Assembly: GCA_964187785.1 (NCBI GenBank)
Contig: OZ076419.1
Span: 39,804,001-39,868,000, forward strand
Direction of reading: 5' to 3'
Length of the DNA stretch: 64,000 nucleotides
From: Amphiscolops sp. MND2022
Lineage: Eukaryota
Shown: positions 1 through 56,526 of the stretch, piece by piece
Layout of the letters: every line of letters starts with the position of its first letter
Position numbering within the stretch: position 1 is the stretch's first letter
Position numbers and translations under genes: made by a program
The notes under the pieces: model-generated
Told to the model about the DNA's origin: nothing
The model's database searches: none
Seen by the model: only the letters and a program-made list of their open reading frames with translations

Positions 1-1
1 A

Positions 2-2670
2 ATGCCTGATGTGCTGGTGCTAACTATGCCCCTGTCTCGCTTCGCCGAGGTCGCTGAGATGGTCGGAGCCATATACGATCCAAACTTAAGAGGATCACAA
101 AAGGAACCACCCCCACAGCGAGTGATCTTCGCCAATCTCCTGGATCACATGGCTTGCGAAGGATTGCTGCATGACCTGGCCGCGATAATGTCCAATGTCC
201 GACGACTGGAAGACATTGCTGCCCTGGTGAACGAGGTGGTTGGTGCAATGGAACGTGCCGCAGGGATCCTTCGGGGTCGTCTGGGAGCGCTCGCGCTCTT
301 TGTATCCCCACCGAGATTCATGTATTGGCCACGCAGTCTGCAGCAGTTCGTCTACATTCTGCTGGAGGTGTGCAAGGCGCGCAGAGTGGAATTCGCCATC
401 TGTGCACCGAACTTGCGCGTGGATTGAGAGGACCTGCGCCCGGATACCATATCATATCCTGCCTTCTTTGCCGCTGTATCTAGAGCGCTGGTGGCTATAG
501 AACGCTCGGGAAACGCCCAGCTAACCATTGACGATGCCATCCTCTATGACTATGGAATGCGGATGGGCAGACTGGCCTTTGACCTTGACGGCAACCGCAC
601 CGCCCGAGAATCCAATGTAACTGAGCGAGAGGCTGTTCGCCGGTACAATTGGCTAGTGCGAAAGGATAAAAAAATCCCAGTGCGCGCAGAATTAGCCGAT
701 CTGACGAAGCAAATTGGTGCATGGCCTGCGGCGCGCACCGTCGAAAGAACGATTCCTCAGATCCGCTTCGCCTCGGGAATCGAGCCCGTGAAGCTGCCTG
801 TAGGGCTGCGATGTATCATAGCAATAGAAGCAACAAATCTGAAAGCAGAAGTCGACGCCGCAGCTACAACTTATGCTCATTGGTACCAGACTAGGTTTAC
901 CACTAGCACTCTGGCAGAAGTAGCTCGAGAGCTCGATTGTCCATTGGAAGCCTTCTGTACCAGTCTCGGTCTAGGATGGAACCTAGAGGTGCTAACTTCT
1001 GAGTTCTCGCTGACCCCTACGCAAACGGACAAGCTGTTAGAAACAATTGGAGAGGCAACCGTCGGAGAAATACTAGCGCTCGCGCTAGCGATGGGCCCAA
1101 CCAAGTTCGTAGCCGGACCACTGGCTTTGTTAGTCGACATGGTAATTGCCTGCGACCTAACCATGTTCTACAGCTACTTGGTCCTGGCACAAGGACAACT
1201 ACGCAGTCTGACCCGTTGGGGACACTTGATGACTTCCAAAGACCAGCAGGACTATTCCGCACAACTGGAGCGCATGCGTGCGTCAATCCAGCACTGGCTA
1301 TACTCCACCCTGGTGTTCGCCTCCGGCCTATTCGTGGGCGTAGACCAATCCCAACCACTCCATAATCCCGACCAGCAGATTTCCCGGGAAACGGCAGGAT
1401 TCCCCATGCCGCAGCAGATTGCAGACCTCACCCTGGCAGAAGTAGAAGACTTTGTTGCGGCAATGGCTCCTGTTTTGGCCCCTATCTTTGGCGCAGTGGG
1501 CGTGTGCCGGTACCCAACAAAACCATTGGCAACGGCCGTCCAAGTGCACATGGTCTCTTTCAATACCTACCTGCGAGGCCGTCCTTCACTGGCGTACCCA
1601 AGGGTAATACATGCAGTGCTGAGTGGTGAAGTGCCGCATGGGTACACAACTATCAAATCCGAAAGAGAGTTGGAGGAGAACTTGATGGGCTTGCTGCGCG
1701 CGCGCACCAGGAAAGCATGTCCCCTACCCCGGGAGCATGGACCTGTGAACTGGTATTCCGCACCTCTCAGTTTGGAAGGGGTTCCCTTTAGGTTCCCCTG
1801 GAGTCAAGAGTTCGTGAGAAAGGTTATTCGCGCCAGCACTAGTGCTGGTCCACCCGTGGATCCTCTATACTGCTTCAAATGCATCGCCTTCCCAAATCGT
1901 TAATGGAAGGAGCCGTTAGGTTGGCCCAGGGCAAAACCCGTTGGACGCGCCCCAACCGCCAAATCCAACACTTGGAGTCAGCCCAGATCCCAGGATGGGT
2001 TGAAGGCGCTGCTCAGATTAGGCAGAGAAATCTCCAATCCCGCGTCATTCCATTCCCCAGGAAGTCGGCATGGAAGCCTACGGGAAAGATGACCATGTCT
2101 GGAGATATGTCCATCGTCCAGCATGATGAGATAAATTCCGTGTTGGGCTCAACAGAACGAGCGCGATGGGAAGAATACTGTCTAGAGTTGGAGATTGCAA
2201 GCTTCCCTAAATGGAAGAGAGCTTGCGAGCTCTGGAGCCAATCTGGATGGATCTCACGCCGTGTAGCACTAGCGGTCGAGGGTAGAGCAGAGATGGCGAG
2301 ACAACAGGCGTTCGCGCCTACCATGCTCGCACCCACGATGGCGATGTCCTTGGATCGGCCCATCTCTCAACCGATCACCATTAATCTTCCAACCCATGAC
2401 TTGGAGCCAGACCCAGTTGGCCCGTCTTCGTCGCGAACGAGCCCTGAGTCCTCACAGCAGCAATCCGGAGAGCACACTGCCGAATTGACTCCCAATGCAG
2501 CACTAGTGCAGCCTATTGCCGAGTTGTCGCTCCCCGAAAGTCCGTCGGACTCTGAAACAGTTACAACCGGAGTCTCTCCCCGACGTCGAGCGTCAGTGTC
2601 GACCGACAACCCAGAACAGAACTCAGATGATGCCACTAAAGAGCGGACCCGACGCAGTTCAGCTCAATAA
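2..2670 (+). pseudogene. Disrupted >880-codon ORF of an unidentified GC-richer element; N-terminal part has an SGNH-hydrolase-like alpha/beta pattern (tentative)
   Basis: ORF 2-427 continues in frame past one TGA (GTG GAT TGA GAG GAC) into 491-1903. ORF 1879-2670 joins by a 1-nt shift at TTCAAATGCAT (~1873-1883). GC is clearly higher than the flanks. The pattern ALFVSPP...LQQFVYILLEVCKARRVEF resembles an SGNH strand-helix (by eye only). Confidence 0.5.
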
Positions 2671-2684
2671 ACCCAGCCGTTAAT

Positions 2685-2702
2685 GGGAGCGTTCGCGCTC
2701 CC
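2685..2702 (+). other. Perfect 7-bp hairpin with UUCG tetraloop just after the ORF stop
   Basis: GGGAGCG-TTCG-CGCTCCC, 14 nt downstream of the TAA ending at 2670. Confidence 0.7.
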
Positions 2703-5926: not shown

Positions 5927-5932
5927 GGCTCG
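5927..5932. repeat. Left 6-bp TSD GGCTCG of the Polinton-type element
   Basis: GGCTCG immediately before AGTAGT and again at 20319-20324 immediately after ACTACT. Confidence 0.95.
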
Positions 5933-6081
5933 AGTAGTCATAAAAGTAGGAACCCTGGGTCACTTTTGCTCCGTTTTCGTGAATGTGAACTAATTTATAC
6001 GGGGGGGGGATTACCGTGAAATTAAGACTGTTGGTGTGGGGATATAACCTTGAAATTCAGACTGGTTTAAATGGGTGTGGC
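5933..6081 (+). repeat. Left terminal inverted repeat (149 bp)
   Basis: AGTAGTCATAAAAGTAGGAACC...G9...ATGGGTGTGGC is the reverse complement of 20170-20318 with one mismatch (GCTCCG vs GCTTCG). Confidence 0.95.
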
Positions 6082-7085
6082 ATTCATTAGTTACGGCGCT
6101 TAATATGGAAAATCTAGACGCTGGTGGTTTTATGGTTGATTAGTTTTATGTACTGCGAGCATATGGTGATTGTAAAGTTGCTCTCCGCGGAAATATTTCA
6201 AGTGGTTTTTGTTTACAAATCTCATGTGGTTATTGTTTGCAATTCTCAAGTGATCTTGAATTGTGTGTCAGGCAACTGGGTGAGGTCTCATCTTTTGATA
6301 AACCAAGTCGACAGCTTCTTTCTTATTTAATTTGTTACAGCTTTCATGTCATTGCACAAAAGCCCAAGAGTTGTTTCGCCCATGTGCAGATAATTTTTCA
6401 GATACTTTCAAATAGCAATCACAGCGATCAAAACTCCAGAAAATCCAGCAGCCATTTTACCTGGAGCAAAAACAACAATTGCTTGGTAAGTGTTTAACTT
6501 ATTATTTTAAAAAACTGGACATTCTGCGAATTGACCGATCTTCACAATTCAAGTGATTTTGAAACGAATTAAGTACACCAATTCTTTTCAATCCTGAATT
6601 TCCTGATTCTGAATGTTTCAGAGATAGCCAAACATCGAAGATTATTGTGATTTCTATTCCAATTCAAAATTCCAACAATCAGTACAATGAATGAAAAAGC
6701 GAAACGGACAAGAAGCAGCAACCAAAAAAAACCAGCAACAACTCAAGCAAAACTAATACAGGTTGGTTATTTGCTTTGTCTAAATTCATGATTTATTAAC
6801 TAGAGTAACCAAAAAAAACCAATACGAAAAACCTTGCTCCCAGTGCTTTCAATGACTTTCATGTTTACAGATCATCGCCACTGTTCAACATCAAAGAATG
6901 GTCAAGGAATACAATGAACCTGACAACTATGAGACGCTACTACTCTCCAGTTAAGTCAAAGAAAACTTTGAGCAAACACTGCATTTAGAGCTATATCTCC
7001 TGCATACATTTATCAGAATATATATTTCGTATCCACACACACGCAAAACTGAAAGTCTAATTAATAATTACGTTGGTCTAAAAGT

Positions 7086-8270
7086 CTAAATTTCCATAAT
7101 ATTTATAGAGCTATAAAATTTCTTTGTCTTTGAGTAAAAATGGCAGCATTCCAGTGCAACATACCTTGGGTAACCTCTGTCTATGTGAAATATTGGTCTA
7201 AATTTCCGCATTTTAGAGCTTTAATTTTTCTTTAACTTGTCTTTGAGTAAAAATGGTAGCATTCCAGTGCAACATACCTTGGGTAACCTCTGTCTATGTG
7301 AAAATTTGGTCTAAATTTCCGTCATTTTAGAGCTATAATATTTCTTTACCTTGTCTTTGAGTAAAAATGGTAGCATTCCACTGCAACATACCTTGGGTAA
7401 CCTCTGTCCAATTGAAAATTTGGTCTAAATTTCCGTCATTTTAGAGCTATAATATTTCTTTAACTTGTCTTTGAGTAAAAATGGCAGCATTCCAGTGCAA
7501 CATACCTTGGGTAACCTCTGTCTATGTGAAAATTTAGTCTAAATTTCCGTCATTTCAGAGCTTTAATATTTCTTTAACTTGTCTTTGAGTAAAAATGGTA
7601 GCATTCCAGTGCAACATACCTTGGGTAACCTCTGTCCAATTGAAATTTGGTCTAAATTTCCGTCATTTTAGAGCTATAATATTTCTTTAACTTGTCTTTG
7701 AGTAAAAATGGTAGCATTCCAGTGCAACATACCTTGGGTAACCTCTGTCGAATTGACAATTTGGTCTAAATTTCCGTCATTTTAGAGCTATAATATTTCT
7801 TTAACTTGTTTTTGAGTAAAAATGGCAGCATTCCAGTGCAACATACCTTGGGTAACCTCTGTCCAATTGAAAATTTGGTCTAAATTTCCGTCATTTCAGA
7901 GCCTTAATTTTTCTTTAACTTGTCTTTGAGTAAAAATGGTAGCATTCCAGTGCAACATACCCTGGGTAACCTCTGTCCAATTGAAAATTTGGTCTAAATT
8001 TCCGTCATTTTAGAGCTATAATATTTCTTTAACTTGTCTTTGAGTAAAAATGGTAGCATTCCAGTGCAACTTACCTTGGGTAACCTCTGTCCAATTGAAA
8101 ATTTGGTCTAAATTTCCGTCATTTTAGAGCTATAATATTTCTTTAACTTGTCTTTGAGTAAAAATGGCAGCATTCCAGTGCAACATACCTTGGGTAACCT
8201 CTGTCCAATTGACAATTTGGTCTAAATTTCCGTCATTTTAGAGCTATATTATTTCTTTAACTCGTCTTTG
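7086..8270. repeat. Tandem array, 114-bp unit, ~10.5 copies
   Basis: GAGTAAAAATGG recurs at 7132, 7245, 7359, 7473, 7587, 7700, 7814, 7928, 8042 and 8156. Confidence 0.97.
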
Positions 8271-8352
8271 CTTTCAGCTTAGTGAGCTAAAGTTTTGTTC
8301 TTTGTATTTCATTAATTTATCGAAATGTTCACCTTTTTTTAAAAAAAAAAAG

Positions 8353-10775
8353 CTCCCATAGAGTAGACACAATGTACTGGGTAAGACGGGCCTAACCCAG
8401 CCTGCACAGTACGAGTGTCTACTGGGGTCTTAGTATTGGTTAACCTCTCTTGGAGCAGGTAGACTGTTAGTGCTCTACTCTTCAAGAAACGGGTTGAGGT
8501 TAATCAAAGACTCCAGTAGGCACTCGAAATCTCCTGCACAAGTACTGATTCGATTCGATTCGATTCAAATCTTTACTTTTCTTCCTCTTCAGTTTAAATA
8601 CCTCTACACAGACTATATGGCGGTATCACATGTAAATTATGCAATTTCTCTACGTGGCATGGAATGTCTTTTTTTTGGTAGTGGAGAGCTTGAGATTTTG
8701 AAAATTGTTTCTTTGAAATCATATGTCCTGTTGTACTTCCATAGGGGATAAGTTCTGTCGGTTTGAAAAATTGTTGATTATGTCCAGCATTTTAGTGTTT
8801 TATTTGTCTTTAACTCTCAAAATGACTTACTTTAGTGTACTTTCATGGGGACAACTTCTGTCGGTTTGAAAAATTGTTGATTATATCCAGCATTTTTGCT
8901 TTTTAAATGTCTTTAACTCAAAATGGCTTACTTTAGTGTACTTCCATAGGGGATAAGTTCTGTCGGTTTGAAAAATTGTTGATTATATCCACCATTTTTG
9001 TTTTTTAAATGTTTTGAATAATATTTTAAGGGATCTTCTAAGTTCGATTGAAAAAAATATTGTTTATTTGTGACATTTTGGTGAATAGTTTGTCTTTGTC
9101 GCATAAAATGGTTTGTTTAGTATACTTCCGTTTTTGTCGATTTTTCTTCCGATTCCTTGTGCAAATTTTGTCTTCCTCTCATTTGCTATTTGGTAATTTC
9201 ACTACTCCCATGATGTAGACACAATGTACTGGGTAAGACGGGCCTAACCCAGCCTGCACAGTACGAGTGTCTACTGGGTCTTAGTATTGGTTAACCTCTC
9301 TTGGAGCAGGTAGACCGTTAGTGCTCTACTCTTCAAGAAACGGGTTGAGGTTAATCAAAGACTCCAGTAGGCACTCGAAATCTCCTGCACAAGTACTGAT
9401 TCGATTCGATTCGATTCAAATCTTTACTTTTCTTCCTCTTCAGTTTAAATACCTCTACACAGACTATATGGCGGTATCACATGTAAATTATGCAATTTCT
9501 CTACGTGGCATGGAATGTCTTTTTTTTGGTAGTGGAGAGCTTGAGATTTTGAAAATTGTTTCTTTGAAATCATATGTCCTGTTGTACTTCCATAGGGGAC
9601 AACTTTTGTCGGTTTGAAAAATTGTTGATTATATCCAGCATTTTTGCTTTTTAAATGTCTTTAACTCAAAATGGCTTACTTTAGTGTACTTCCATAGGGG
9701 ATAAGTTCTGTCGGTTTGAAAAATTGTTGATTATATCCACCATTTTTGTTTTTTAAATGTTTTGAGTAATATTTTAAGGGATCTTCTAAGTTCGATTGAA
9801 AAAAATATTGTTTATTTGTGACATTTTGGTGAATAGTTTGTCTTTGTCGCATAAAATGGTTTTGTTTAGTATACTTCCGTTTTTGTCGATTTTTCTTCCG
9901 ATTCCTTGTGCAAATTTTGTCTTCCTCTCATTTGCTATTTGGTAATTTCACTACTCCCATGATGTAGACACAATGTACTGGGTAAGACGGGCCTAACCCA
10001 GCCTGCACAGTACGAGTGTCTACTGGGGTCTTAGTATTGGTTAACCTCTCTTGGAGCAGGTAGACCGTTAGTGCTCTACTCTTCAAGAAACGGGTTGAGG
10101 TTAATCAAAGACTCCAGTAGGCACTCGAAATCTCCTGCACAAGTACTGATTCGATTCGATTCGATTCAAATCTTTACTTTTCTTCCTCTTCAGTTTAAAT
10201 ACCTCTACACAGACTATATGGCGGTATCACATGTAAATTATGCAATTTCTCTACGTGGCATGGAATGTCTTTTTTTTTGGTAGTGGAGAGCTTGAGATTT
10301 TGAAAATTGTTTCTTTGAAATCATATGTCCTGTTGTACTTCCATAGGGGATAAGTTCTGTCGGTTTGAAAAATTGTTGATTATATTCACCATTTTTGTTT
10401 TTTAAATGTTTTGAGTAATATTTTAAGGGATCTTCTAAGTTCGATTGAAAAAAATATTGTTTATTTGTGACATTTTGGTGAATAGTTTGTCTTTGTCGCA
10501 TAAAATGGTTTTGTTTACTATACTTCCGTTTTTGTTGATTTTTCTTCCGAATCCTTGTGCAAATTTTGTCTTCCTCTCATTTGCTATTTGGTAATTTCAC
10601 TACTCCCATGATGTAGACACAATGTACTGGGTAAGACGGGCCTAACCCAGCCTGCACAGTACGAGTGTCTACTGGGGTCTTAGTATTGGTTAACCTCTCT
10701 TGGAGCAGGTAGATTGAGCAAATTCTACTCTTCATTGTTGGGTTGAGATTAACCAAAGAGACTCCGGTAGACACT
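8353..10775 (+). repeat. Higher-order tandem array: units of 852, 749 and 649 bp plus a terminal partial unit
   Basis: GTAGACACAATG at 8363, 9215, 9964 and 10613. Units contain 3, 2 and 1 copies of a ~103-bp subrepeat (TGTACTTCCATAGGGGATAAGTTCTGTCGG...). Each full unit has a (GATTC)n microsatellite. Confidence 0.95.
8363..8525 (+). ncRNA. Putative structured RNA module (long multi-stem hairpin), repeated in each array unit
   Basis: GAGTGTCTACTGGGGTCT/AGACTCCAGTAGGCACTC (18 bp), TTGGTTAACCTC/GAGGTTAATCAA (12 bp), TCTTGGAG/CTTCAAGA (8 bp) and GTAGA/TCTAC. All non-WC pairs in these stems are G.U on the + strand. No expression evidence. Confidence 0.5.
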
Positions 10776-13436
10776 TTATAAACGAGAATACAGCCAAGGT
10801 CGTATTTTCAAAGTAATACGACCTGTATACTTTAGCTCTTTTTTTGGAGCTTCTTACAGTCTTCTTGTTTCCGTTTCAAAATTTCTAGGACTTATTGTAC
10901 AACTGTCGTTTCGAAATTCGATGGACTATACAAAGAATTCAAGGACCCTTCGCTCTACAGGAACGAGTAGTCCTCTGTCTGGTTTCTGTTGAATTGTACT
11001 TCAACTAGAAAAATTCAGCCCTCCCTCTCCAGGATGTGATGCTAATATCTCGCTGTAATAATTGTTGTATTGCGTTGGAGTGAATTATGTCGAGTTTTCT
11101 ATCTCAGGTATTGTTTCAGTTTCGTATTTCAATTGAATCAATTTGATTGTTGGTGTTTTCAGCATCGGCAACTTGATTCCGGAAAACTTTTGAGATCAAT
11201 TAGTGTACTTAGCTTTGTTTTTACTTTATCCTCAATTACCAACTTATGCAGATTGTTGCATTTTCGCGTTGGAATAGATACCACTGTGATTATTGATGTT
11301 TTTCAACCTCATCTTTGATTTTCTAGACGAAACTTCCTAAAAGTGAACAGATATCGAGTAAAACCAGACTTTTCAGCTGTACAGGTTGAACTTGTTCTGT
11401 TGAGTAGTAACAGACTACTACTCAATATCTTTCAACTTTTTCCCACTTGAATTAGCTCCCAGCTCTTCACTATGTGACGTGGAACTCAAACTCTTCATTT
11501 GAAGACACTTCGCAACATTAGCAGGAGAGGTTATTAATTATTGAAATTTTGTAATAGACACCAGTTTGACTGATGATATTCATTTTTGGAACAGACGAAC
11601 ATAATCTCAATTGCGAACAATCAAGTACTGCATTCGATAAACGTCATCAATTTCATGCTTTGCTCCATCATGGGCGTTTTTGACAATGTCTATGCATTGT
11701 TTGGTGGTATTTTGTATAGGAATAGACAGGATTGTTTTTTTATTGTCAACCTTGAAGTTGCGCGCGAGGCACTAGTTTATGAATTTTAACTGAATTTTGA
11801 CTGTACTGTTGCAATGAAGAGAATATACCAATGTGAGTGTTGCTTCATCTTTCAGTTATTACTTTTGGAGGCAAATCAGAGATTACTTTTTTTTGTGGAA
11901 AACGGACCTTTCCGCAATACTCAAAGCACCAAATAGTAGAATTATGTAACGTATTAAATAGCAGGCTGACTGTCGATGTTTTTTTTATTGTTCGGTTGCT
12001 TTTGATTTGGAATGGTTGAATGCAATCCTTATGCACTCTACTTCTCCACGGTTGAATCAAGGTAAATAAATTAGCTTTTACTTTATTTCCATGGTTTCAA
12101 TTTGAAAATTTTTGAAATTTCGTGGTGGAACAAGTATCACTGTGAATTCTTTTGTTTTGAAAAACGTTCTGAATTACATTTTCTAATCAATCTGATAACA
12201 GTCTTTTCTTCAACTGGTAATATTTACCTCGAACGAACTGAATATCTGATAATTACTGGTAGTTGTAAAAGGTATCAAAATAGTCATTAGGTTTTGACTT
12301 ATTAATTGTTAGGTAACGTTGAAACAGCACTTCAAGTAGTTGGCAGTTCACCTATAAGCCTTCTTGACTTTGATTTGCAACGTTTTATTTCAGAGAAGAA
12401 GTGAAAAAAATAGCATTGCTAGTTAGAGATTTTCTCGCCTGAAAGTAATTTGGAAACATTGGACTCAATGGATACACATCTTTCCAACTGATGTTCATCT
12501 GAAATCCTTTCAAATGCCTGTCTAATGTAAACAATCGTTCAACTATTTATTTTGAAATTGCTCTATTTTGATGTTTATGTTTGAAGCATTGATTTTGATT
12601 TTCAAAACTTATCCATTATGCAGTGTACTTGTGATTTCTTTCGGTACTGACTCTAAGACGTGAAGGAAGTATGTTATCTTTTTGGTAGTAATAATCCGTT
12701 AGCAACATTAGGTCTTTTTTTTGTTGTTGTTTTCAACTGGATACATCAATCTCTGAGATTGACTCTTAACTGGCAAAACAATTTGTCAATAAGATCATGG
12801 GTTCACCTTGTTTCCCTCAGTTGTCATTTCCAAAATAAATAAGTACGATTCGATGAAAAAAATTTCAAACGACAGTTTTCCTATTTTTTTGTAAACCCAC
12901 CACGGTCACAACCTTCTAATGTTTTCCTGAACGAGTTCCACACCAATTTTGATTGACACCACTCTTGACTGTCGAAAATCTGAGAATTGGATGGTATTCT
13001 CGTATACATTTTGAATTGCAGCAACATTCAATTTTCACACTACAATACAATAAAATTTTAAAAACTATCAGTAGTTTTACAAGATGAAGGTTTCAAAAAG
13101 TTTTCAAATTGCGTTGATAGAGATGCTCAAAAAATGTTCAAGATAATCCTGATTTCTAGAGTTTTCAACAATATTTTCGAGTGACAAGACCAACAACCTA
13201 TGAACTGATTACAAAGATTGTCTCGAAAAAGTATGCGTGTGTGTGGATTCCACTTGATATATTATGTTGCTTGTTTTAATAGTTTTATTCATCAATTTTA
13301 GACAGTAATGAAGTTTAATGTAATTAGCATCGGAAGTTAAATTTACTTCTTGTAGTCTTTCGGTTTTGAAAAGTAATAAAGGAATACTAAATTGGCCAGA
13401 CATTAAAGTTTAAGTTTCATAAAACAAATTAAAAAG

Positions 13437-16400
13437 TTAGGCTTCTTGAGCTTCAAACATGATGAATGGGTTTTTTCGCGCTCGTTTTGGCGGTGAGTAC
13501 ACTTGTTCGTCGTCGGGCGTGTCAGACGATAGGAAACCTGGGTCAGGTATATCTTCTTTCTCGCTCTCTGTGCTTCTTTTATATGACACAACAAAGTGCT
13601 TCTCGTCCATTGATATCGTTGGATCAACTAAAATCTCTGGCAATATACTTTTTGGCGATGAGTGGGGTATTTCATAATGCCCAAAAGCTAGGGTTTCATT
13701 CACATCTTCTTCAATGTATCGCTTGTTATCAGCACTGTTCAAAACAATTTTGTTGCATTCCTCAACAAAAAGCTCCAAGTTGTGAGACTTGATTGTTCGC
13801 ATTTTCTCTTTGATCGTTAGCTTTTCAGTCAGGACTCTTTTGTATAGATCGTGATGGAGAGCTTTCTGTACTATCTTCGTAACACCTTTTGCACACTTTT
13901 TGGATTTTACTGATGATTTGATGCTGTACATTTTTGCTCTCAGTCCGACATACTCGCTGATGATTCCACTATTCATCTCGTCTTTCATCTTCAGTACTAC
14001 TTTCTTGTTTTTATCGCAGTGCAAAGGGTGATCGTTTGGATAATCTGAAAAGTCAAACTCGTCCTGGATTTTTTGAAAGTCTTCGTACAAATTTTCCGTC
14101 TCAATTGCTAACAAAAGCGAGTCTGTGTCTGAGTAGAGAAGTTTCGCCTTGTCCCCATAAGTTGGTTTTATTGTTTGGTAGAGAAATTTGTACATAACCA
14201 ACTTGGACAAATCCAAAACTGTAGCTCCAATGTATGTAGGTTTGTTCCAGGTTACTATCGACTTACCCATAATCAAAGCACATAGATTCGGTTGAAAAAT
14301 TTTAAAAGATTTGAAGTTGGGTTTGCTAATAAACTTTTCACAATGGGTGTCATCTGTGAAAAGCTTTATATTTTGACGATTCGTCAAATCTTCCATGGAT
14401 TTCCCAAAAACTGAATTGTTTAACAATTTTCCGAGATCTTTCAAACAATCAGTTTTTGCTTTACGCCGAATTTCTGTGTTGATGTCAATATAGCATTTCA
14501 TCCATTTGCTCTGCCAAAATTTGATAACTTTATGAACTTTTACCACTTGTAACCCATGAGAAACGTAAAATTTCAAAATCCTGTAGTGGCACACGTAATA
14601 TTCCTTTGTGTTAAATGTTTGCAAAAGCTTGAATGTTTCCCCTGATTCACACTTTTCTCGTGCTTGTGAAGGTGAGAGCATTTCTTTTGTTATTTTTAAA
14701 TGCTCTGGTGCCAATGGATAATCATTGTGTTGATCATGTAATTCTTTTGGATATTCCAAATCAACAACAACGAAAAATCCAAATTCAGCATCGTCAGCAG
14801 TTGCTAATACAGTTGCAAGAGAATCCGTTGTTTCTGAAAAGTTGCCAATGGGTAAACTTTCACGCATTACTCCTCCATAGAGATTATTAGCGTCTAATAA
14901 AATCATCCAGGTTTTTGGCTCTGTTGCGTTATAATTTTCACATTGTGGATTATTCGCTTTGAAAAATCTACTGTGAAAAACACCACATATTCCACCCCTG
15001 ATTCCTCTCTTCACAATATCAAGATGGTCTTTTTCTGATAGTAAATCCAATTCAACCTTTGTTGTTTTGAGCATTGCTTCCCATGCAAAATGAGGAGCTG
15101 TAAGAAAGTGTGCTGGGTCCAGACCAAAATTGCTGTAAGCCAGTTGTCGAAAGTTCTCAAATACGTCGGCTAGGGTGTAAACATCAACTTGAAGACAAAA
15201 ATATCATGATATTCCCCCAGATTTTTTATACCTAGGCATTGCCACACCTTTTTAGCGTGCTGGTAGTCTTGATCCGATATCGGTTCATTGGATAAAGTGT
15301 CAATCCAGATGGGGGGAAGTTCGGTTTCTTGGAACTTGTCAAATGAGTCCATATAGCTATAAGGGTAAACTCCTTTCTGAAGAATTAGATTTTGCTGATC
15401 TTGTGAGAAATGACTGAAACCTTCTTTGAAGGTAGTAAAGGGAACATTATCAGTCTTCATTGTTTCAATAAGGCTGCTCAATGACTTTGCTTGGAATCGG
15501 AAACTATCAATAAACTTGAGCTTTTCAAATGTAATTACCTTTTGATTTTGGTCATTCTGGAAAGACCCTGTTGGTACACAAATTGAAAAGCTGATGAATT
15601 CTTCAGAGTTGTTTGCAATGCACTCTAGTTTTTCGTTACCGTCTCCAGGTCGATAATACCTCAGAAGTTGCCTAAAATCATACTTTGAGCCATTGTGAAA
15701 AATAACTGGAGTGAAATTTGGTGTTCTGCATGATATGTTACATTTACTATGGGCTATGCCTCGCAGTTTACCGGTAACATGATTATGCTCAAAAACCCTG
15801 TCGTTTCCGAGTGTTTCGTCACAAATAGAACAATCAACAGCATCTCTCAACTTTGTAAAATCACTAGTTTTCTTTTGGTAAAAAGGAAATCTTCTCTTGT
15901 CTCGATATATTTCTTTAGCCCAATTTCGAACCGTGTCCAAAAAACCTGTGACACACCCCTCACTCCGACTGGAATATTGCTTTATCAGTTTCCCTTTTTC
16001 ATTTAAGCATATTGCATGAATGCCACAAGGTATTTGTTTTTCAACTTTTCGTGCATGTAATTGGTTGGGTGTGTAGGTAATTTTTGGTGTGATGGCCTCT
16101 ATGTCTGCATAAATAACAAACGGGGCTCGCATTCTTGCTGCAAAACTTTTCCAAGCCATCTTACCATTTTGTTTCATCTTTATTCGGCAAGGTTGTTCAG
16201 AACACATGAGTTGACGATTCTTGAAGCGACTCAAGCTTGAACTTCCAGTCAAACAACGTCGACAGTAAAATTGATTCTTTTTCTTTGTTTCTCTTCGCAT
16301 AAACCCATTGAAATTTGTAATTAAACAGTAGTGATAACGACCATCGTCCTCAAGTAGCAATAAATCCACCGGAAATCCATTTTTGTTGGAAATACGAATA

Positions 16401-17239
16401 GGATAAATTTCCTTATCCAGAGCAAAAACATTAATTGATGAATCATTAGCTCCTTCAATCCTGCCAATGTCTTTAATTGTCACAGGATTCTCCGCGTCAC
16501 ATAAGTCAATTTTTTGAAACTTTTCATATGTGCTAGGACGACTCTTCTTGTTTTTTATATCGCGATAATGTCTTGCTGCGAGAATACAAAGCTCAAAACA
16601 GTTATTTGCCTTGATTGTTCGGATATTAAGCAAGAAGTTATTGTTTGAAAACTTGGTTGGTGTTGGTATAAAGCTTCCAGCTCTGATGGGCTTGTTTCGA
16701 GCGAAATTAATACTCAATTTCAAAATCTTCTTAACACTCCATCCAGAGCCATGCTGACAGAAGTTTTCAAACTGTTTCAGAATGTGATTTTTAATTTGGT
16801 CGAATGTTTCTCTCGAGAGACCCTCTGAATAAACAGCTTGCATTTTTGAGTTGAAACAAGTCTCAATTTCCAATTCAGTAGTTGGTTTGAATAATAAAAC
16901 ACACAAGGATAATTGGATTTTCAAACTAGTTGCCTCTTGTAAGTTTTTGATAATTAATGAATAGAGGTCCGGATAGAAGTTATTTAGGAAAACAATGGGA
17001 TCGAGGATTGTATTTTTTGGTTTAAAAGAGATAACTTTCAAGTAATTTCGTGTGGTATTCTCTTCAAAATCATAATCATCGCTGTCAGTTGTGTTCTCTC
17101 TTGTTGTTTCTGAGTTGGTTTGAGAATTTGACTCACGGTCGTTCGAATGATCTCTGTGTTTTTGGCGTACGTGTCTGTTCAGATTTCGCTTGTGTTTGTA
17201 ACATTTTAAGCAAGTTTCACAACAAAGTTTTCTGTCCAT
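13437..17239 (-). CDS. polB: Protein-primed family B DNA polymerase (pPolB, ~1265 aa) with N-terminal C2H2 zinc finger and endonuclease-VII-like module; one frameshift near 15200
   Basis: CETCLKCYKHKRNLNRHVRQKH (C2H2); CSIC...HNHVTGKLRGIAHSKCN (EndoVII-like); Exo I YADIEA; Exo II HNGSKYDF; motif A LLDANNLYG; motif B KLLNNSVFGK; motif C YSDTDS. The frame shift at the A5 run 15197-15201 joins YHD to LQVDVYTLADVFENFR. Confidence 0.95.
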
Positions 17240-18076
17240 AATGGAGGAGCGACTGGAAGGGTAGAATATACAACTTGTATTTGCAACAAAAGTTTTCAGT
17301 CTGTTTTTCAGAAAAATTCATTAGGTATTGGTCAAAATGTTGGAAAGTTGGGATAGCCACTTCCTATTGGTCGCAATATTAAATATGTTTCCCTGTTGCG
17401 ATCTTAATCACATGGAGTTTACAATCATTCATGTTTCAGGTCATTCTGTGAATTTCTTGTAGTTTTTCCGAAAAATTCTGTTCTTGACCTCAGAGAAGTT
17501 GTTTCTACTGAAAATTAAATACTAGGGAAGTCATATATAAATTATTTGTTATTTGTTTAGGTATAGTTTTAGTTGTAGTTATAGTTAAGCTATTTTTGAC
17601 CACAGAAAGTGACCTCTTGAAAAGGTCTAGATGACTAGCAAGTTTCAGTTAAGGTGAAGTTTTTCTTAAACTCAAGAAGTTGTTTTTCTCTGGACCTTAG
17701 AAAGATACAAAACACGTAGTGAATTTCGATTTAACTTTGAGTCTCAAGACATTATTCATGTTCATAGTTATTCTTATAATCTTTAACCTCAGGAAAGTAA
17801 TCTTCTTTTGAAATAGAAAACGAAATAGAAGCGATATTCAATTCAAATATTGAGTCTTGATTGATTAGTTTCATGATTTGCTCGTGAAGGTTATAAACAA
17901 AGTCATTGACAACATACCTTCGTTAGTTATAAATCATAAATTATTGAATTTCAACACTTTGTTTCACGATTGAATTGGAACGAAAGCTTTATTACACTAC
18001 AACCAATCAAAGGCATAGACTTTTGATTCATTTTTTCGAAGCATCTAACACATGCTTTAGGAAACGCTCAAGGAGT

Positions 18077-18829
18077 TCAAGTAATTAGGGCAAGCTTCAT
18101 GGCATAGATGATTATTCCATATTCACTTTTTACACTCTCTACCAACTGGAAACATAGGCTCCAAAGAGCTTGTTCGTGTCCTTGTAAGTTGTCTCCATCC
18201 ACATAATATTGGATTGGGGTTACTGTCGTTGATGAGTTCAATCTTGGGACAACAAAATCGAATTTTGCTTTAACAGGAGGGGCGGATGAGAAAAAACGTT
18301 TGAGTTGCTCTTGAATTGTCACTGTCCAAACGAAGGCTCCACTATTCGATTTTCTGGCAATTTCTTGAAAGTATCGGGAATAAAAACTGCAGGATCCATA
18401 TAAAAAAATTATGTAGTACCTGAAGCAACATATGTAAAAGACAAGTTGCGACTTGGGTGAGATACTTGAAACAGTTTAAAAAATCGAGTTTTTTACTTAC
18501 TTGATATCTGAGTCAATAGTCGTTGCTTCTATAGTTTCTTTTACTTCCAAAAGTGTGGTCTTCCTTGTTAAACCACCATCGATATTTCCCTCCACCATTA
18601 CCATCTCGTCTTGAACTAGGTATTGACCAAACAGTTTTGTGTTGTTGCTTGTAAACGTCATTTTGAAGCGTTTCGAAGATTTTGAAATAAAACCGGATTT
18701 TCCGAAGAAGAAGAACGGTCTAGGTAACAATAAAGTGAATCTGATAGTTGGTTGGCTGTCTTGAAATGGTATAGGGGAAAAATTACAATGACTGGAATAT
18801 TTGTTAGACAACACCTTTCTATTGGCCAT
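18077..18829 (-). pseudogene. Interrupted or spliced ORF of unknown function inside the Polinton
   Basis: ORFs 18497-18829 and 18077-18322 are in one frame. The two intervening stops both fall inside a 36-nt GTAAGT...TTTCAAG segment (18465-18500). Confidence 0.3.
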
Positions 18830-20169
18830 ATTTCAGTGTTAGTCTTTTCTTTCAATCAAGCACAACTTGTAATATTCTCTCAGATATCATCAATTTCTAT
18901 AACCTTCAATAACAAACTGTGAATAATTTCTTTTGTTAGTATTCTTGGGTATTCATTTCAAATTTGAAACATTCCATCTTTGATTATTCATACAACAAAG
19001 TCCATAACTATTCTGACAGATTATTGCAATTAGATCACTCAATTCTTTCAACTCGTCAGCAAAACCGTCATTATCGGAAACAAATACGCTGTATAAAGAG
19101 GGTTTATTGGTTGTCCTGTTGTTACATTTTCCACCATAGTCCATTTAAGTTTTGCACCTTAAACATGTTGAAATTTAATGAAATATTAGATTTTAAAAAA
19201 AATCGTTCTTTCAAATTACCTGTTTTGTTTGGAAACAATTCAGAAACATCAATTACCACCACTGGAATCCAAAAGTTACTCATAAATTGTTCGAGGCATT
19301 CTTTGAAATTGTCACTGTCTGTTCGTTGGTATATAATAAGATACCTGTAATTTTGTTGTTAATGAAAAAGTATACATATCACTTCTTGTAATAACTAGAT
19401 ATAACAACCTGAAGTTTTCACTTGGCTTTTGAACATATATTGAAACAATCAACTCCTGGAGTGTAGCTTCCCGTATCATTTAATCACAACTCCATAAATC
19501 ATAGTATTTGAAGTACGGAAATGTTTGCTAAAACTCATATTAAGGGAGTGCGAGGGTGGAAACAGTATTAATTGTTATACATTTTACCAAAGAATTCAGA
19601 TGCAATTCCATAACTTGAAGTGGTTTTCACTATACTTGAAGAAAATCTTCACTATAATAGCTGTAGAGATTCATGAAAAGGATCTACTTTTATTAACTTT
19701 AACCGAAAGTGGTGGCGATGTCACGATTACTCTCGAATTTATGTCCCCTGCGTGGATTGAGTTAACACTTTATTTTCACCATCACAAGAGTCTGAAGGCA
19801 GTCCCTCGAAGCGAAAAATTACGTTATCTTTTTATGCGGAAGCGACTTACAGATCTCTTTGAAACCCAGAAACCTCCTTTCATGGATTGAGTGTTTCTCA
19901 AAATTATATTCCAAATTAACCTCAGAAACGAATTTCTCGCCGTTAGTTAACATCTTGACTCAATTATTTAACCAAGCTCTTGAAGTCACTCGATAATAAC
20001 TTCTTTGATATTGAAAATATTGAGAAGACGCGGCGCACCCTCTTTATTGACACACAAGTCAAACCTTTACGATTTTTAAACAAGAACCACTTGAGAATTC
20101 GCCCCAGCGCAAGTGGTAAAAATAACAAATGGCACTGTACACATAAAAGCCCACGACGCGAGTAATAAA

Positions 20170-20318
20170 GCCACACCCATTTAAACCAGTCTGAATTTCA
20201 AGGTTATATCCCCACACCAACAGTCTTAATTTCACGGTAATCCCCCCCCCGTATAAATTAGTTCACATTCACGAAAACGAAGCAAAAGTGACCCAGGGTT
20301 CCTACTTTTATGACTACT
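20170..20318 (-). repeat. Right terminal inverted repeat (149 bp)
   Basis: Reverse complement of 5933-6081; ends ...ATGACTACT and is followed by the TSD GGCTCG. Confidence 0.95.
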
Positions 20319-20954
20319 GGCTCGTGTATATATATTTTCTTGTCGAAAATGTTCTGACTTCTGTAGATGAACTAGAGATACTACTGGATTTTGACTCGAG
20401 GTCATCATAACTTTTTTCAGTCGTTAATTCCTCCCCAACTACACATACCAGAAATGAAATATAGCCCGTCTGAAAGGTCCGTTACTGGACGTTCAGTGTA
20501 GGTTAGTGAGCCTCTGTCACCGTCCTCGCCTCTCGCTCCAAGATTTTAGTATCTTTTTTTTGGTACCGTTACTTCGCAACAGTTTCGCGCTTCGTGCGGT
20601 CCGCTCCCCGGGGGCGTGTAGTGCACAATACTTTGCTGTCAAAAGATTTGGGGTGGTTTTTCTTATTGGGTCAAGGTTTCTTTGAGAAAAAGAATTTTGC
20701 TAAAAGAAAATTCTCGAAAAGTTACTGGTATTAATATACTGGTTAATATTATAATTCCCCATGAATTTTTCCCAAATTGATTTTAAAAAAAACACATGAA
20801 ACACTGAGTCGGACTTGTCGTACTAGACAACTTCAATTTTGGCTTTGGATCTTCTCAAGTGGTTCAGTGTTCAAGAATGATACTTCACTTAATTGGTCAT
20901 TATCCTCTCCTCGATATTTACCTTTAGGGTATTGTTAAAATATTATTATTCAAG

Positions 20955-33112: not shown

Positions 33113-34146
33113 CTACCAAACCACTTCATCGTCAAAGATCAAACAATACAACAACTACACACAATGAACATCTGATTGCTGAACCACTCAATACTCAGCA
33201 CGACCCCGTTAACCAAAGAGCGATGGCTATTGAGAAACTAGCAAGCCGCAACACAACCATCACTCTTTCACCCAAAAAATACACTTTTTTTAACGGCAAA
33301 AACGAGAATTTTGGTTCTTTTGAAGATCTTTTCCACGAAACACTCAGAATGCAACCCACAATAACTGAGGAAGTGAAAATATATCATTTCCACGCACATT
33401 TGCGTGGACTACCATTGAAATTATTCAAAAATATCCAACGAGCACCAACAAGTACGAGTGAAGATATTCTCGTAGTGTTCCGAAAAAAATACGTTAAGCC
33501 CGACTCAAGTCCGTCAGCAAAACATAGATTTCATCGCTTGGTATTTGACCCGGAACGCCAGAAACTACAGGATTTCCTCGAGGAACTGCAAGAAAGCGCA
33601 GAAAAGGCCTTTGGTGACATAGCATCCCAAATGATAGGAAATCTATTATATACAAAAGCCACCACATTTGAAAAGGTCTATTAATCAAGCTTATCTTGAA
33701 AATGGAACGTATGAACAAATAGTCCGACATCTCGAACGTGAGATGGAATTGCACGGACTTGTGTCAGAAGACACAGGCGTCAAAACACAAATGACAGTAA
33801 TAAAAAAACAATCAGAAGACAAAACAACACAACCAAAAACAGTGCCCAACAACGCATTACAAGACGACCAATGTCTATATTGTAAGGACACAGGGCACAA
33901 AGCAGCAGACTGCGCAAAGCTAGCAAAACGCCGTAAGCTTGAAGAAGACACTGACGTCGCAGGATAAACGCATTGTAACGCACTAGGACACAAAAAACCA
34001 ACATGCTACTTCGGAGCAAAGTTGGAAAACCGTCTTCCGAAGTGGACATTAACAAAAGCACTGAAAAAACACATTGAAAGCTATAAAAGTTCCCACAAAC
34101 ACATCAACGCGAAAGCACCCCGACAACAACATTCATCAACGAAGGA

Positions 34147-34159: not shown

Positions 34160-37100
34160 AGCCACGCCCCACAAAATCTTAGGAGAAAGATGACTGGAAG
34201 CATGCAACTCCTCATTCAATAAAAACAAATACTTTCACACATTATACTGACTCACAGACTCAAGAAACTCAACAAAACGAATCAGAGAAGGAATTGTATG
34301 AAATATACAGAGACCCCCCTGACAGATACACAACCACAACTCCTGATAAAAATAACGACGAAACCTCAAACAACCTGTATGAATCTGAACACGGAGATTA
34401 CCACAAAAATTACCAGAAACTCTTCCAAAAAACTATGTTGAACCTCTACAAGCACGAGACCTATCCGAAATACCAACTGAAACTGCATTAAATACAAAAA
34501 TTACCCCTCATAGATGATGATCTCCAAAATCACCTGACAATTAACAAAGAAACATACATCCCTATTCGCCTTTTATTAAAGAACCTCAGGCTCAAAAGTG
34601 AACGTCCTATGTAATACTTGCCAATGGATTTCGAAAAACTTACACTTGACAGTTTAATTGATACTGGAGCTCTCACGAGAGCTATATCAGAACAAGATCT
34701 TCATAAAATCGAACTACTCGCACCAAAAGCAATATCAGACACTGGTCCTGAACCAAATTTCCAAATAATGGTATCAAATGGACAATTAGAAGCACCAATT
34801 GGAACAGTCAGCCTCACATTTGAAGTGGCAGATTTTATGTTCAAAGAAAGTTTCATCGTCATGAAAGTCTTACCGAAACCCTTAATTGGACTTTGTTTCT
34901 GAAAGAGGAACAATGCCATTTTCGACATCCGACAAGGAGTATTGACTTTCCCACACTTATCAATGCAACTGAAACACGAAAACAATCTTCCAACACGACT
35001 ATCAACACCACTACTCGCAGAAGCAACATACAGACTGCAATCGGGTGAAACGATGCTTTTTGCAAGAAGAATGCCACACTTAATTGATCATGATGCAACA
35101 GGCATAGTAACGCCATCTGCGCGTTGAAGATCATGACACACTCTTTTATCTGCACAGTTAACAAAAACGCAGTAGGATATCAAATCTGTAATTTCTCGGA
35201 AATACCATATACAATCACAACCGACACACATCGAGCCGACTTCCCGAACAGTTAAAATTCATCAAACCAATCAATCCTTCAACACTAACACTCATCATGC
35301 ATCAACATACTGAAGTTACGAGGTATATCTTAACAAACTTCCTAAAGTAAACAACAAAGAAGACAAAACAGAACAGTACTGGTTTCCACCAACAGAACAA
35401 CCAGGAGATCCCACAAAATACACACCCATCCAAAATCGAATATTTGATGAACTAGTGCAACTACAAACACTAGAAAAACTCAACCCACAGGACGACGAAC
35501 AATGACGCAAAACAATCCTTGACAGTTTTGATTGGAGTGACACAACACTTACACATTTCGAACGACAAAAGTGGAAGAACTGCTGGTTGAATTAGACCAT
35601 ATTTTCACCCGACACAGGTTTGACATCGGAACAAGTAGAGAATTCAAAGTCAAACTCACAGCAAATGATGACCGAACAGCATAATATAGCCAATGTGTTC
35701 CAACTCCGATCAACCTAAAGGATGACATCACGGTAGAACTTGCCCTACTTCACAAGTATGGTATGATAACAACCCTACCTTTTTACTAAATATGCAAGGC
35801 TTTTTTCGCGCAACGAAACGCTAACGGCCGCTTACGACTGTTAGTGGACCTGCGCAAAATAAACAATCTTATCTCAGTAAACAACAACCACCCAGTCAGT
35901 ACACTTTCCGATGCAGCCCAACATATGGCAGGAAAGAAATTATTTTGTAAACTTGACTGTTCACAAGCGCACCACTGCCTTCAGGTGGCAGATTATCAAT
36001 CATTCCAAACATTGGCCTTCAACTTCGCTAGCCGAACTTTCGCGTATCGGCGATTAGCACAAGGCCTTAGTCAATCACTATCAGCATTCTCCAGTTTTAT
36101 TCGAGAAAATTTAGACACCCTCATCAAAGAAGATTAGTTCGCCCATTACGTTGATGATATCGGAATCGCAGCGACCACAGTGGCACAACTGTGTATAAAC
36201 ATCGGAGCAGCCTTCGAATGTAAACGGAACGCAGGTCTGAAGTTGTCAATGTCAAAATGCCATTTTGGAGTGAAGCAAGTCGACTTTCTAGGAAGGACAA
36301 TCAACCCTGAAGGAGTTTCTCCCCAAGTCGATAAAGTCAAAAACTTCCCAGCTAAACTCAAATTCCCCAAAATTTAAAAAGAGTCTTCAAAGGTATAATA
36401 GTTTTCTGAATTGTTACAGAAATTTTATGCCGCGCCTTTCTGAACGACTTACCCCTTTCTTTAAACTATTGCAGGCAATCTCCTCCTTCAATCGTGCCAA
36501 ATGGCACTCAAACAACCACGAAAAGACAAACAACTAATCCTCATGTCAGATGCAATCTTCACAACCGCAGGATATGCGATCATGATTGAAGACGATCCCC
36601 AACAAAAACTACAATCAAAGCGCAAAACATATGCCCAAATAGTCTTCGGCTCAAAAACCTTAAATCCAACGCAATTGAAAATGTCAATATACGCAAAGGA
36701 GTTTTTGGCAAGCTTCTTCGCGTTCTCCGAATTTGAACATCTTATGTGGGGAAGTACTTTTCCTGTAATTGATTTCACTGAAAAGCGAGAAGTTACGCGT
36801 TCCTTCCAAACAAATATCATTCCCCCGCTTTATGGAATGCCTGCGACTACGTCCTGCAGTACAATTTCGTCATCGCAGGAGCTACGAACACGGCCGCAGA
36901 CTTTTTGTCGCGAACGGAAATCAATCCAACAGAAAAACTAGAAATGACTCTACGCAACGACATACAAACAAAAGCTATCTTAATATTCAATCCTCTGTCA
37001 TTGCAGAAGAAGAACAATTTAATCTTTATCCGGACGATTAACTCGATGAAATCGATGATGAAAATTAAATAACGGAAATACAAAACTTTCATTAACCCAC

Positions 37101-56460: not shown

Positions 56461-56519
56461 TCTATTGAATACGCCCTCTCGCGTCTACTGTTCCCCGAAG
56501 CGCAGGCGCGGCGTAATTA

Positions 56520-56526
56520 GTTTTTT
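56520..56526 (-). promoter_or_regulatory. -1 frameshift slippery site A_AAA_AAC of B with downstream GC-rich stem
   Basis: TCA AAA AAC TAA followed by CGCCGCGC...CGCGAGAGGGCG. Confidence 0.75.

What the first reader, a model, noticed from the sequence alone, without database searches (positions are those of the whole stretch)
5933..20318. Recently inserted Polinton that keeps only its protein-primed polymerase: candidate self-replicating, integrase-borrowing satellite element
Seen: near-identical 149-bp TIRs, a perfect 6-bp TSD and a pPolB with all catalytic motifs intact and one homopolymer frameshift. No other ORF over ~130 aa exists in 14.4 kb; 10.8-13.4 kb and 17.3-20.1 kb contain only stop-riddled frames, and 3.6 kb is tandem repeat. 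Established: canonical Polintons encode an RVE integrase (which makes the 6-bp TSD), packaging ATPase, protease and capsid proteins. Inference: an intact polymerase beside long-decayed neighbours fits a lineage that kept replicating with its own pPolB while taking integrase (and perhaps capsids) in trans from an autonomous relative.
Basis: partly seen in the sequence, partly recalled or inferred. Interest (0 to 1): 0.85.

Follow-up and report, generated by a model that had tools for sequence, protein, structure and literature searches.

The report
Reduced Polinton family without integrase
This 14.4-kb insertion has the ends and insertion footprint of a Polinton/Maverick virus-like transposon but carries only a protein-primed DNA polymerase (frameshifted in this copy), two small unknown genes and repeats, and it belongs to a multi-copy family that has kept spreading without an integrase or capsid genes of its own.

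Summary
There are 152-nt TIRs with one mismatch, a perfect 6-bp TSD (GGCTCG), Maverick-type 5'-(AGT)2...(ACT)2-3' termini, a Polinton-type pPolB with one frameshift, and about 3.6 kb of tandem repeat. The reduced structure is not a one-off deletion. Four sister copies in one ENA assembly share the architecture, three have their own perfect and different TSDs, and at least two carry an intact 1266-aa pPolB. Older subfamilies (about 5-8% and 13-18% diverged) and a relative with 70% amino-acid identity in pPolB, from another sample, keep the same right arm. No integrase, ATPase, protease or capsid remnant was found. I searched Pfam and PHROGs on all open stretches, and ran tblastn with 530 ORFs from 36 Polinton-like loci. 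The same search detected retroelement integrases elsewhere in the window. Both are orphans under purifying selection. The best reading is a non-autonomous Polinton derivative that replicates with its own polymerase and is integrated in trans. That last step is inferred, because no helper was seen. I rate it a new variant of a known kind.

The parts
5927..5932 (.). Left copy of the 6-bp target-site duplication (GGCTCG)
   Evidence: Read directly. It is identical to 20319-20324.
5933..6084 (+). Left terminal inverted repeat. It starts with AGTAGT.
   Evidence: 152 nt, 99% complementary to the right arm. One search finds the terminal 31-mer only at the two ends of the element in the 64-kb window. 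The end motif matches the 5'-(AGT)2//(ACT)2-3' described for Mavericks (PMC8097293).
6198..6245 (+). Subterminal 24-bp motif, two tandem copies (TCAAGTGGTTnTTGTTTACAAATC-like)
   Evidence: An inverted copy lies at 20071-20094, and a copy lies at the equivalent place in the distant relative L007 (4283-4316), where the surrounding non-coding DNA no longer aligns. It is a candidate cis-acting site (inference).
7086..8296 (.). Tandem array of a 114-bp unit, about 10.6 copies
   Evidence: Copy number differs between sister copies.
8353..10716 (.). Higher-order tandem repeat (period 650-852 bp, 3-4 copies, with internal 103-bp subrepeats)
   Evidence: The number of units differs between sister copies and accounts for most of their length differences, 13.5-15.8 kb.
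10800..13436 (.). Unique left-arm DNA with no detectable gene
   Evidence: There is no Pfam or PHROGs hit for any open stretch of 40 aa or more. There is no tblastn hit from 530 Polinton-like ORFs. About 1 kb of it is missing in sister copy L001. It is present at 92% identity in the older copy L012. Short-exon genes are not excluded.
13437..17239 (-). [quoted passage not shown] It is broken in this copy by one frameshift, with no premature stop otherwise.
   Evidence: It is 99% identical to the intact 1266-aa sister proteins P0028 and P0037. Relatives carry PF03175. There are 18,871 representative relatives at E<=1e-3. A 47%-identical relative sits next to rve integrase and an A32 ATPase.
15734..15865 (-). 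HNH / endonuclease VII-like zinc motif inserted between Exo I and Exo II of pPolB
   Evidence: Pfam PF02945 at E=1.2e-4, which is below the gathering score. The columns C470, C473, H485, H487, G494, C500 and N501 are invariant in 20 relatives, including the pPolB of a canonical Polinton.
18077..18661 (-). Gene B: a two-exon gene of 167 codons (exon 1 18661-18501, GT..AG intron 18500-18420, exon 2 18419-18080, stop 18079-18077). Orphan, function unknown.
   Evidence: The exons are conserved with L007 (51-61% aa, dN 0.25-0.38, dS saturated) while the intron is not, and the intron differs in length (81 vs 69 nt). GT..AG is kept in 8 of 9 copies. Only close relatives exist among 5.8 billion proteins.
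19600..19890 (+). Gene A: a 96-codon ORF transcribed away from gene B towards the right TIR. Orphan, function unknown.
   Evidence: The start and stop positions are shared with L007 (65% aa identity, dN 0.26, dS saturated). It is identical or nearly identical in the four sister copies. Only close relatives exist in the protein database.
20071..20094 (-). Inverted copy of the subterminal 24-bp motif
   Evidence: 2 mismatches; none expected by chance.
20167..20318 (-). Right terminal inverted repeat. It ends with ACTACT.
20319..20324 (.). Right copy of the 6-bp target-site duplication (GGCTCG)

Best explanation
The element is one recent, now polymerase-dead copy of a multi-copy family of reduced Polinton/Maverick derivatives.

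The unit that moves consists of:
- Maverick-type TIRs with (AGT)2 termini and a conserved subterminal motif;
- a long non-coding arm, mostly tandem repeat;
- a pPolB;
- two small lineage-specific genes (A, 96 aa; B, 167 aa, spliced).

Shown: the family inserts with 6-bp target duplications at unrelated sites. It has done so in several waves. It lacks detectable integrase, packaging ATPase, protease and capsid genes. pPolB, A and B are kept by purifying selection.

Inferred: copies are amplified by protein-primed replication from the repeated AGT termini using the family's own pPolB. This polymerase is probably favoured in cis because the priming protein stays attached to the DNA it copies. The integration step is done by an rve-type integrase supplied in trans by an autonomous Polinton in the same host, one that recognises the same kind of termini. 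Whether helper capsids are also used is open. This particular copy can only be a passenger, because its polymerase is frameshifted.
For: - TIR, TSD and termini. The same (AGT)2//(ACT)2 end motif with 6-bp TSDs defines intact Mavericks in PMC8097293.
- Family: the 90% cluster of the polymerase has 56 member sequences in assembly ERZ25074608, spread over at least 12 contigs among the 15 listed.
- Sister copies L001-L004 have both TIRs, the same architecture and about 99% identity.
- Three sister copies have perfect TSDs that differ from each other and from the window's: CACGTG, AATATT, AACCTG.
- Intact 1266-aa pPolB is present in L002 and L003.
- Older copies in the same assembly: L012 keeps the whole architecture and L011, as far as its locus reaches, the polB-to-right-TIR part (92-95% and 80-88% identity).
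- The relative L007, from another sample, has TIR-A-B-polB in the same order, and only these three genes still align.
- Selection: polB dN/dS is 0.09. A and B have dN 0.26-0.38 with saturated dS.
- The pPolB is of Polinton type. P0059 lies beside rve, a Pox_A32 ATPase and a 532-aa gene, and 22 of 33 IMG/VR loci with a pPolB relative also hold rve.
- Absence of other Polinton genes. As a positive control, the same queries find retroelement integrase remnants at 37.6-38.0 and 52.1-52.5 kb of the window.
Against: - No autonomous partner with matching termini was seen. The host assembly could not be searched by DNA, and the TIR is absent from JGI metagenomes and IMG/VR.
- The 2.6-kb unique left arm has no distant relative to compare with, so a gene made of short exons cannot be excluded. 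Gene B shows that this element does have introns.
- The functions of A and B are unknown. Structure predictions were too poor to use.
- Among recent copies pPolB dN/dS is 0.5-0.75. That is what neutral decay after insertion would give, and it says nothing about current activity.
- Most listed polymerase fragments in the cluster are not full length.
Confidence: 0.6

Rival explanations
1. The reduced element is self-sufficient. It integrates without a DDE integrase, using the HNH/endonuclease VII-like nuclease module embedded in its pPolB, the conserved N-terminal domain, or proteins A and B to cut the target and join the ends.
For: The lineage has persisted through several waves and in a second sample with the same small gene set. 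A, B and pPolB are all under purifying selection. The HNH-type Cys/His/Asn columns are invariant. No helper was observed.
Against: The same HNH-like module is invariant in pPolBs that sit next to an rve integrase (P0059), so it is not an adaptation to integrase loss. The 6-bp TSD and (AGT)2 termini are exactly those of integrase-bearing Mavericks. A and B are small and match no catalytic family.
Confidence: 0.12
2. The element is autonomous in the ordinary way. An integrase (or other transposase) gene is present but hidden as many short exons in the unique left arm or in the spacers.
For: Gene B has a spliceosomal intron, so spliced genes do occur in this element. My Pfam screen only covered open stretches of 40 aa or more.
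Against: tblastn with 22 rve integrases and 10 A32 ATPases from relatives gave nothing in the element, even at E<=0.05-10, while it picked up decayed retroelement integrases elsewhere in the window. One sister copy lacks about 1 kb of the left arm. pPolB itself is intron-free in this family.
Confidence: 0.08
3. It is just a decaying deletion derivative. The polymerase ORF is open in some copies only because the copies are young, and nothing in the element is functional.
For: Recent copies differ by under 1%, with dN/dS of 0.5-0.75 or above. Most polymerase fragments in the cluster are truncated. The window copy is frameshifted.
Against: Against a relative with saturated synonymous divergence, pPolB has dN/dS 0.09. 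A and B keep their start, stop and intron positions while all intervening DNA has diverged beyond alignment. Three age classes in one genome share the polB-gene B-gene A-right TIR arrangement.
Confidence: 0.05

Closest known systems
Polinton / Maverick self-synthesizing transposons (polintoviruses)
   Same: TIRs of about 150 nt, 5'-(AGT)2...(ACT)2-3' termini, a 6-bp TSD, a size close to the 15-20 kb norm, and a pPolB of the clade that in relatives is linked to rve integrase, an A32 ATPase and capsid-size genes.
   Different: It has no rve integrase, which is a defining gene (PMC5499653). It also has no ATPase, protease, or major or minor capsid genes. Instead it has two orphan genes and 3.6 kb of tandem repeat.
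Non-autonomous deletion derivatives of DNA transposons (MITE-like or internally deleted families mobilised in trans)
   Same: It has no integration enzyme of its own, keeps the family's termini, and exists as many near-identical copies with TSDs.
   Different: It keeps, under selection, a 1266-aa replication enzyme and two further genes, so it is not a passive passenger. No autonomous partner has been identified.
Linear pPolB plasmids / 'invertrons' of mitochondria and yeast cytoplasm, and adenovirus/phi29-type protein-primed replicons (comparison from general knowledge)
   Same: It has TIRs plus a protein-primed polymerase as the core. It also has a short repeated sequence at the very terminus (AGTAGT), of the kind used for jumping-back or sliding-back initiation.
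   Different: This element is integrated in a nuclear genome with target duplications, has a spliceosomal intron in one gene, and has no RNA polymerase gene.
Nuclease-bearing pPolB2 of nematode, oomycete and mollusc Polintons (Jeong et al. 2023, PMC10748475)
   Same: A small nuclease-type domain is inserted in a Polinton pPolB. Here it is an endonuclease VII/HNH-like motif.
   Different: I did not test whether it is the same insertion or the same pPolB subgroup. Here the motif is invariant in all 20 aligned relatives, including a Biomphalaria glabrata protein.

Membership tests
Polinton/Maverick | Long terminal inverted repeats | tested here: met
   152 nt, 99%. The same TIRs are present in four sister copies.
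Polinton/Maverick | 6-bp target-site duplication and the conserved 5'-(AGT)2//(ACT)2-3' end motif (PMC8097293) | tested here: met
   GGCTCG on both sides and AGTAGT...ACTACT termini. Three sister copies have other perfect 6-bp TSDs. The motif is described.
Polinton/Maverick | [quoted passage not shown] | tested here: met
   The motifs are visible and conserved. Relatives carry PF03175. Pfam does not reach threshold on the window's own pieces. This copy has one frameshift.
Polinton/Maverick | Retrovirus-like (rve) integrase | tested here: not met
   There is no rve hit in 98 open stretches. There is no tblastn hit from 22 Polinton-type integrases. A positive control elsewhere in the window worked.
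Polinton/Maverick | Morphogenesis module (DJR major capsid, minor capsid, A32-type ATPase, adenain-like protease) | tested here: not met
   Searches gave no hit in the element or in sister copies. Very divergent capsid remnants would escape sequence searches.
Non-autonomous DNA transposon family | Many copies with their own TSDs that lack the integration enzyme | tested here: met
Non-autonomous DNA transposon family | An autonomous partner in the same genome with matching termini | not testable with these tools
   The host assembly (ENA ERZ25074608) cannot be searched by DNA here. The TIR is absent from the JGI and IMG/VR collections.
Linear pPolB plasmid / invertron | Extrachromosomal linear form with terminal protein; usually also an RNA polymerase gene | tested here: not met
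   The element is integrated with TSDs in five loci. No RNA polymerase family was hit. An extrachromosomal form is not testable here.

The most novel reading that the evidence does not exclude
A minimal self-synthesizing transposon that has done without a DDE integrase altogether. It would integrate through the HNH/endonuclease VII-like nuclease built into its pPolB or through the two orphan proteins. Alternatively, still unusual, it could be a capsid-less satellite of a Polinton virus whose tandem-repeat filler keeps it near packaging length (copies are 13.5-15.8 kb).
Probability: 0.1. Interest if true: 0.85.

Novelty: new variant of a known kind. Interest (0 to 1): 0.55.

Why it matters
Polintons are defined by the pairing of a polymerase and an integrase. 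How they replicate and move has never been shown directly. This family has thrown away the integrase and all virion genes, yet keeps the polymerase and two unknown genes under selection and still inserts with the canonical footprint. That separates the two halves of the life cycle in nature. It suggests that the polymerase must be supplied by the element itself while integration can be borrowed. It also points to two small proteins and a conserved subterminal motif as candidate replication accessories. Finally, it warns that solitary pPolB genes in animal genomes need not be wreckage of full elements: L008 and the Biomphalaria glabrata locus also have an intact pPolB without integrase.

Tried and rejected
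- Pfam on the window's two polymerase pieces gave only a sub-threshold Endonuclease_7 hit, and PDB sequence searches gave nothing. The family assignment had to come from relatives.
- AlphaFold2 models of gene A (mean pLDDT 51) and gene B exon 2 (mean pLDDT 42) were too poor, so I ran no fold search. The full spliced gene B product could not be submitted, because only contiguous window sequence is accepted.
- Genes A and B have no homologue in the canonical Polinton L010, in L006, L008 or L009, or in 33 IMG/VR loci.
- The terminal 21-27 nt were not found in JGI metagenomes or IMG/VR. P0028 has no close relative in JGI metagenomes.
- The apparent 16.7-kb inverted repeat around the Biomphalaria pPolB (L009) is only (TA)n microsatellite.
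- The arms of the element share nothing with about 85 kb of host flanks, so the repeats are not an obvious captured host satellite.
- The host species could not be identified. There was no Rfam hit, and the neighbouring ORFs hit only retroelement domains.
- Kapitonov & Jurka 2006 and two Krupovic & Koonin reviews are not held in the paper library. Whether Repbase already lists polymerase-only non-autonomous Polintons therefore could not be checked. Full-text searches found no such description.
Full report
**Observation.**
- The window holds an inverted repeat of 152 nt with 99% complementarity at 5933-6084 and 20167-20318.
- The terminal 31-mer occurs only at these two places in the 64 kb, against 0 expected by chance.
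- The six bases outside each end are identical, GGCTCG.
- The element begins AGTAGT and ends ACTACT. This is the 5'-(AGT)2//(ACT)2-3' end motif reported, together with perfect 6-bp TSDs, for intact vertebrate Mavericks (PMC8097293).
- The only long reading frames are two pieces on the minus strand inside 13437-17239, in different frames. Every other ORF is 128 aa or shorter.
- About 3.6 kb is tandem repeat: a 114-bp unit at 7086-8296 and a 650-852-bp higher-order repeat at 8353-10716.

**The polymerase.**
- Pfam gives only a sub-threshold Endonuclease_7 hit on the window's own pieces, and PDB sequence searches give nothing.
- The protein databases do identify it. The N-terminal piece finds relatives that carry PF03175, DNA_pol_B_2.
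- The C-terminal piece finds 18,871 cluster representatives at E<=1e-3, typically 1100-1300 aa long. One of them is a Biomphalaria glabrata protein.
- The Exo I/II/III and Pol A/B/C/KxY residues can be read in the translations. They fall in invariant or near-invariant columns of a 20-protein alignment.
- A relative with 47% identity (P0059) lies next to an rve integrase, a Pox_A32 ATPase and a 532-aa gene.
- 22 of 33 IMG/VR contigs with a relative also hold an rve integrase. So this is a Polinton-type pPolB.
- Compared with intact sister genes, the window copy has 14-28 substitutions and one frameshifting length difference, with no other break.

**A family, not an accident.**
- The polymerase falls in a 90%-identity cluster of 56 sequences, all from one ENA assembly. 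These include proteins of 1266, 1266 and 1237 aa.
- I fetched four of these loci. All have both TIRs, the same order of parts and about 99% identity in the unique DNA. They differ mainly in repeat copy number, giving lengths of 13.5-15.8 kb.
- Three have perfect 6-bp TSDs that differ from each other and from the window's (CACGTG, AATATT, AACCTG). One (L001) has unmatched flanks and an internal 1-kb deletion.
- The same assembly also holds older copies. L012 is 92-95% identical and keeps the repeats, left arm, pPolB and right arm. L011 is 80-88% identical.
- A contig from another sample (L007) carries a relative with 70% amino-acid identity in pPolB. It has a homologous terminus followed by the same genes in the same order.

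**What is missing.**
- All 98 stop-free stretches of 40 aa or more outside the polymerase were scanned against Pfam and PHROGs. No integrase, ATPase, protease or capsid family appeared. The best E-value was 0.006, about what 98 queries give by chance.
- tblastn with the 17 proteins of the canonical Polinton L010 gave no hit inside the element, even at E<=10.
- tblastn with 530 ORFs from 36 Polinton-like loci, including 22 integrases and 10 A32 ATPases, gave no hit better than E=0.05 outside the polymerase.
- As a positive control, the same queries detect decayed retroelement integrases at 37.6-38.0 kb and 52.1-52.5 kb of the window.

- Between the polymerase and the right TIR, only three blocks still align between the window and L007: the polymerase and two small genes.
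- Gene A (19600-19890, plus strand, 96 codons) has the same start and stop positions in both lineages, at 65% amino-acid identity. The L007 copy has one in-frame stop.
- Gene B (minus strand, 18661-18077) has two exons separated by a GT..AG intron of 81 nt here and 69 nt in L007. The exons are conserved and the intron is not. The splice dinucleotides are kept in 8 of 9 copies examined. The spliced product is 167 aa.
- For both genes dS is saturated while dN is 0.25-0.38. For the polymerase dN/dS is 0.09.
- Both proteins are orphans. Only close relatives exist among 5.8 billion proteins. There is no Pfam family, and no counterpart in canonical Polintons.
- Structure predictions were too poor to use.
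- A 24-bp subterminal motif is present in inverted orientation near both ends and is retained in L007.

**How it most likely works.**
- Shown: a reduced unit (TIR, repeats, pPolB, B, A, TIR) has inserted repeatedly with 6-bp duplications, and its three genes are maintained by selection.
- Inferred: the AGT AGT terminal repeat fits protein-primed initiation with jumping-back, as in adenovirus (general knowledge). The family's own pPolB would amplify the DNA.
- Inferred: the 6-bp TSD and Maverick termini point to an rve-type integrase, which must come from elsewhere, most simply from an autonomous Polinton in the same host.
- The polymerase may be retained while the integrase is dispensable because a protein-priming polymerase acts preferentially on the DNA that encodes it. 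This is my inference.
- The HNH/endonuclease VII-like module in the polymerase is invariant also in integrase-linked relatives. It is therefore not a replacement for the integrase, although a role in integration is not excluded.
- The window copy itself is a dead passenger.

**Comparison and novelty.**
- The element meets the Polinton criteria for TIRs, end motif, TSD and pPolB. It fails those for integrase and the morphogenesis module.
- Since Polintons 'by definition' encode both pDNAP and integrase (PMC5499653), I file it as a non-autonomous derivative and not as a member.
- Full-text searches found no description of polymerase-retaining, integrase-less Polinton families. The founding 2006 paper and Repbase could not be consulted, so prior description cannot be ruled out.
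- Nuclease insertions in Polinton pPolBs have been reported (PMC10748475).

**Limits.**
- The host genome could not be searched for a helper or for all copies.
- The left arm has no distant comparator, so short-exon genes there remain possible.
- The host species is unknown. It is a eukaryote, with a spliceosomal intron in the element and retroelements nearby. The nearest named pPolB relative is from a snail.

- One search printed, through a failed filter in my script, a full table of tblastn pieces. The bounds of those pieces bracket the breaks of the polymerase in the window copy and in L011 and L012.
- and my first notebook entry also hold bounds of open pieces.
- One search printed the size of the length difference.
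- The exons of gene B were joined in a script only to test the splice model shared with L007.

Noticed in passing
window 15734-15865 (-), and alignment A2: An endonuclease VII/HNH-like Cys-Cys...His-x-His...Cys-Asn motif sits between Exo I and Exo II of the pPolB. It is invariant in all 20 aligned relatives, including one from a canonical integrase-bearing Polinton and one from Biomphalaria glabrata. A second invariant Cys-Cys-His-Cys set lies just before Exo I.
   Followed up: partly
L008:8147-13780: An intact 1259-aa pPolB relative (46% identity) on a 1.6-Mb contig has Bro-N, VRR_NUC-like and HNH_3 genes just upstream. It has no rve integrase within 10 kb and no spanning TIR. This may be another kind of integrase-less pPolB locus.
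   Followed up: partly
L009:10001-14242 (Biomphalaria glabrata CM074204.1): A 1267-aa open pPolB relative is annotated by NCBI as a cellular gene with three isoforms. It has no neighbouring Polinton genes within 10 kb. The apparent flanking inverted repeat is (TA)n microsatellite.
   Followed up: partly
L001:5843-19297: This sister copy has unmatched flanking hexamers (ATGAGT / ACCGGG) and lacks about 1 kb of the left arm. This suggests recombination between two copies or a rearrangement after insertion.
   Followed up: no
L011:7454-20300: An older subfamily copy (80-88% identical) has a second partial copy of the gene B / gene A / TIR region beside it, as a nested or duplicated insertion.
   Followed up: no
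window 1-2700: A G+C-rich stretch (51-55% against about 36% nearby) holds three consecutive plus-strand ORFs of 141, 470 and 263 aa. None has a Pfam or PDB match.
   Followed up: partly
window 33.0-38.1 kb and 52.1-57.6 kb: Decayed retroelements are present: RT_RNaseH at 36501-36941, integrase-like remnants at 37578-38035 and 52117-52519, RVT_1 at 54576-55169 and a zf-CCHC at 56517-56948. A block at 33286-33886 is 58% identical to a 508-aa ORF found beside a distant pPolB in L006.
   Followed up: no
window 6198-6245 and 20071-20094; L007:4283-4316: A 24-bp subterminal motif is conserved between lineages whose other non-coding DNA no longer aligns. It may be a protein-binding site for replication or integration.
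   Followed up: partly
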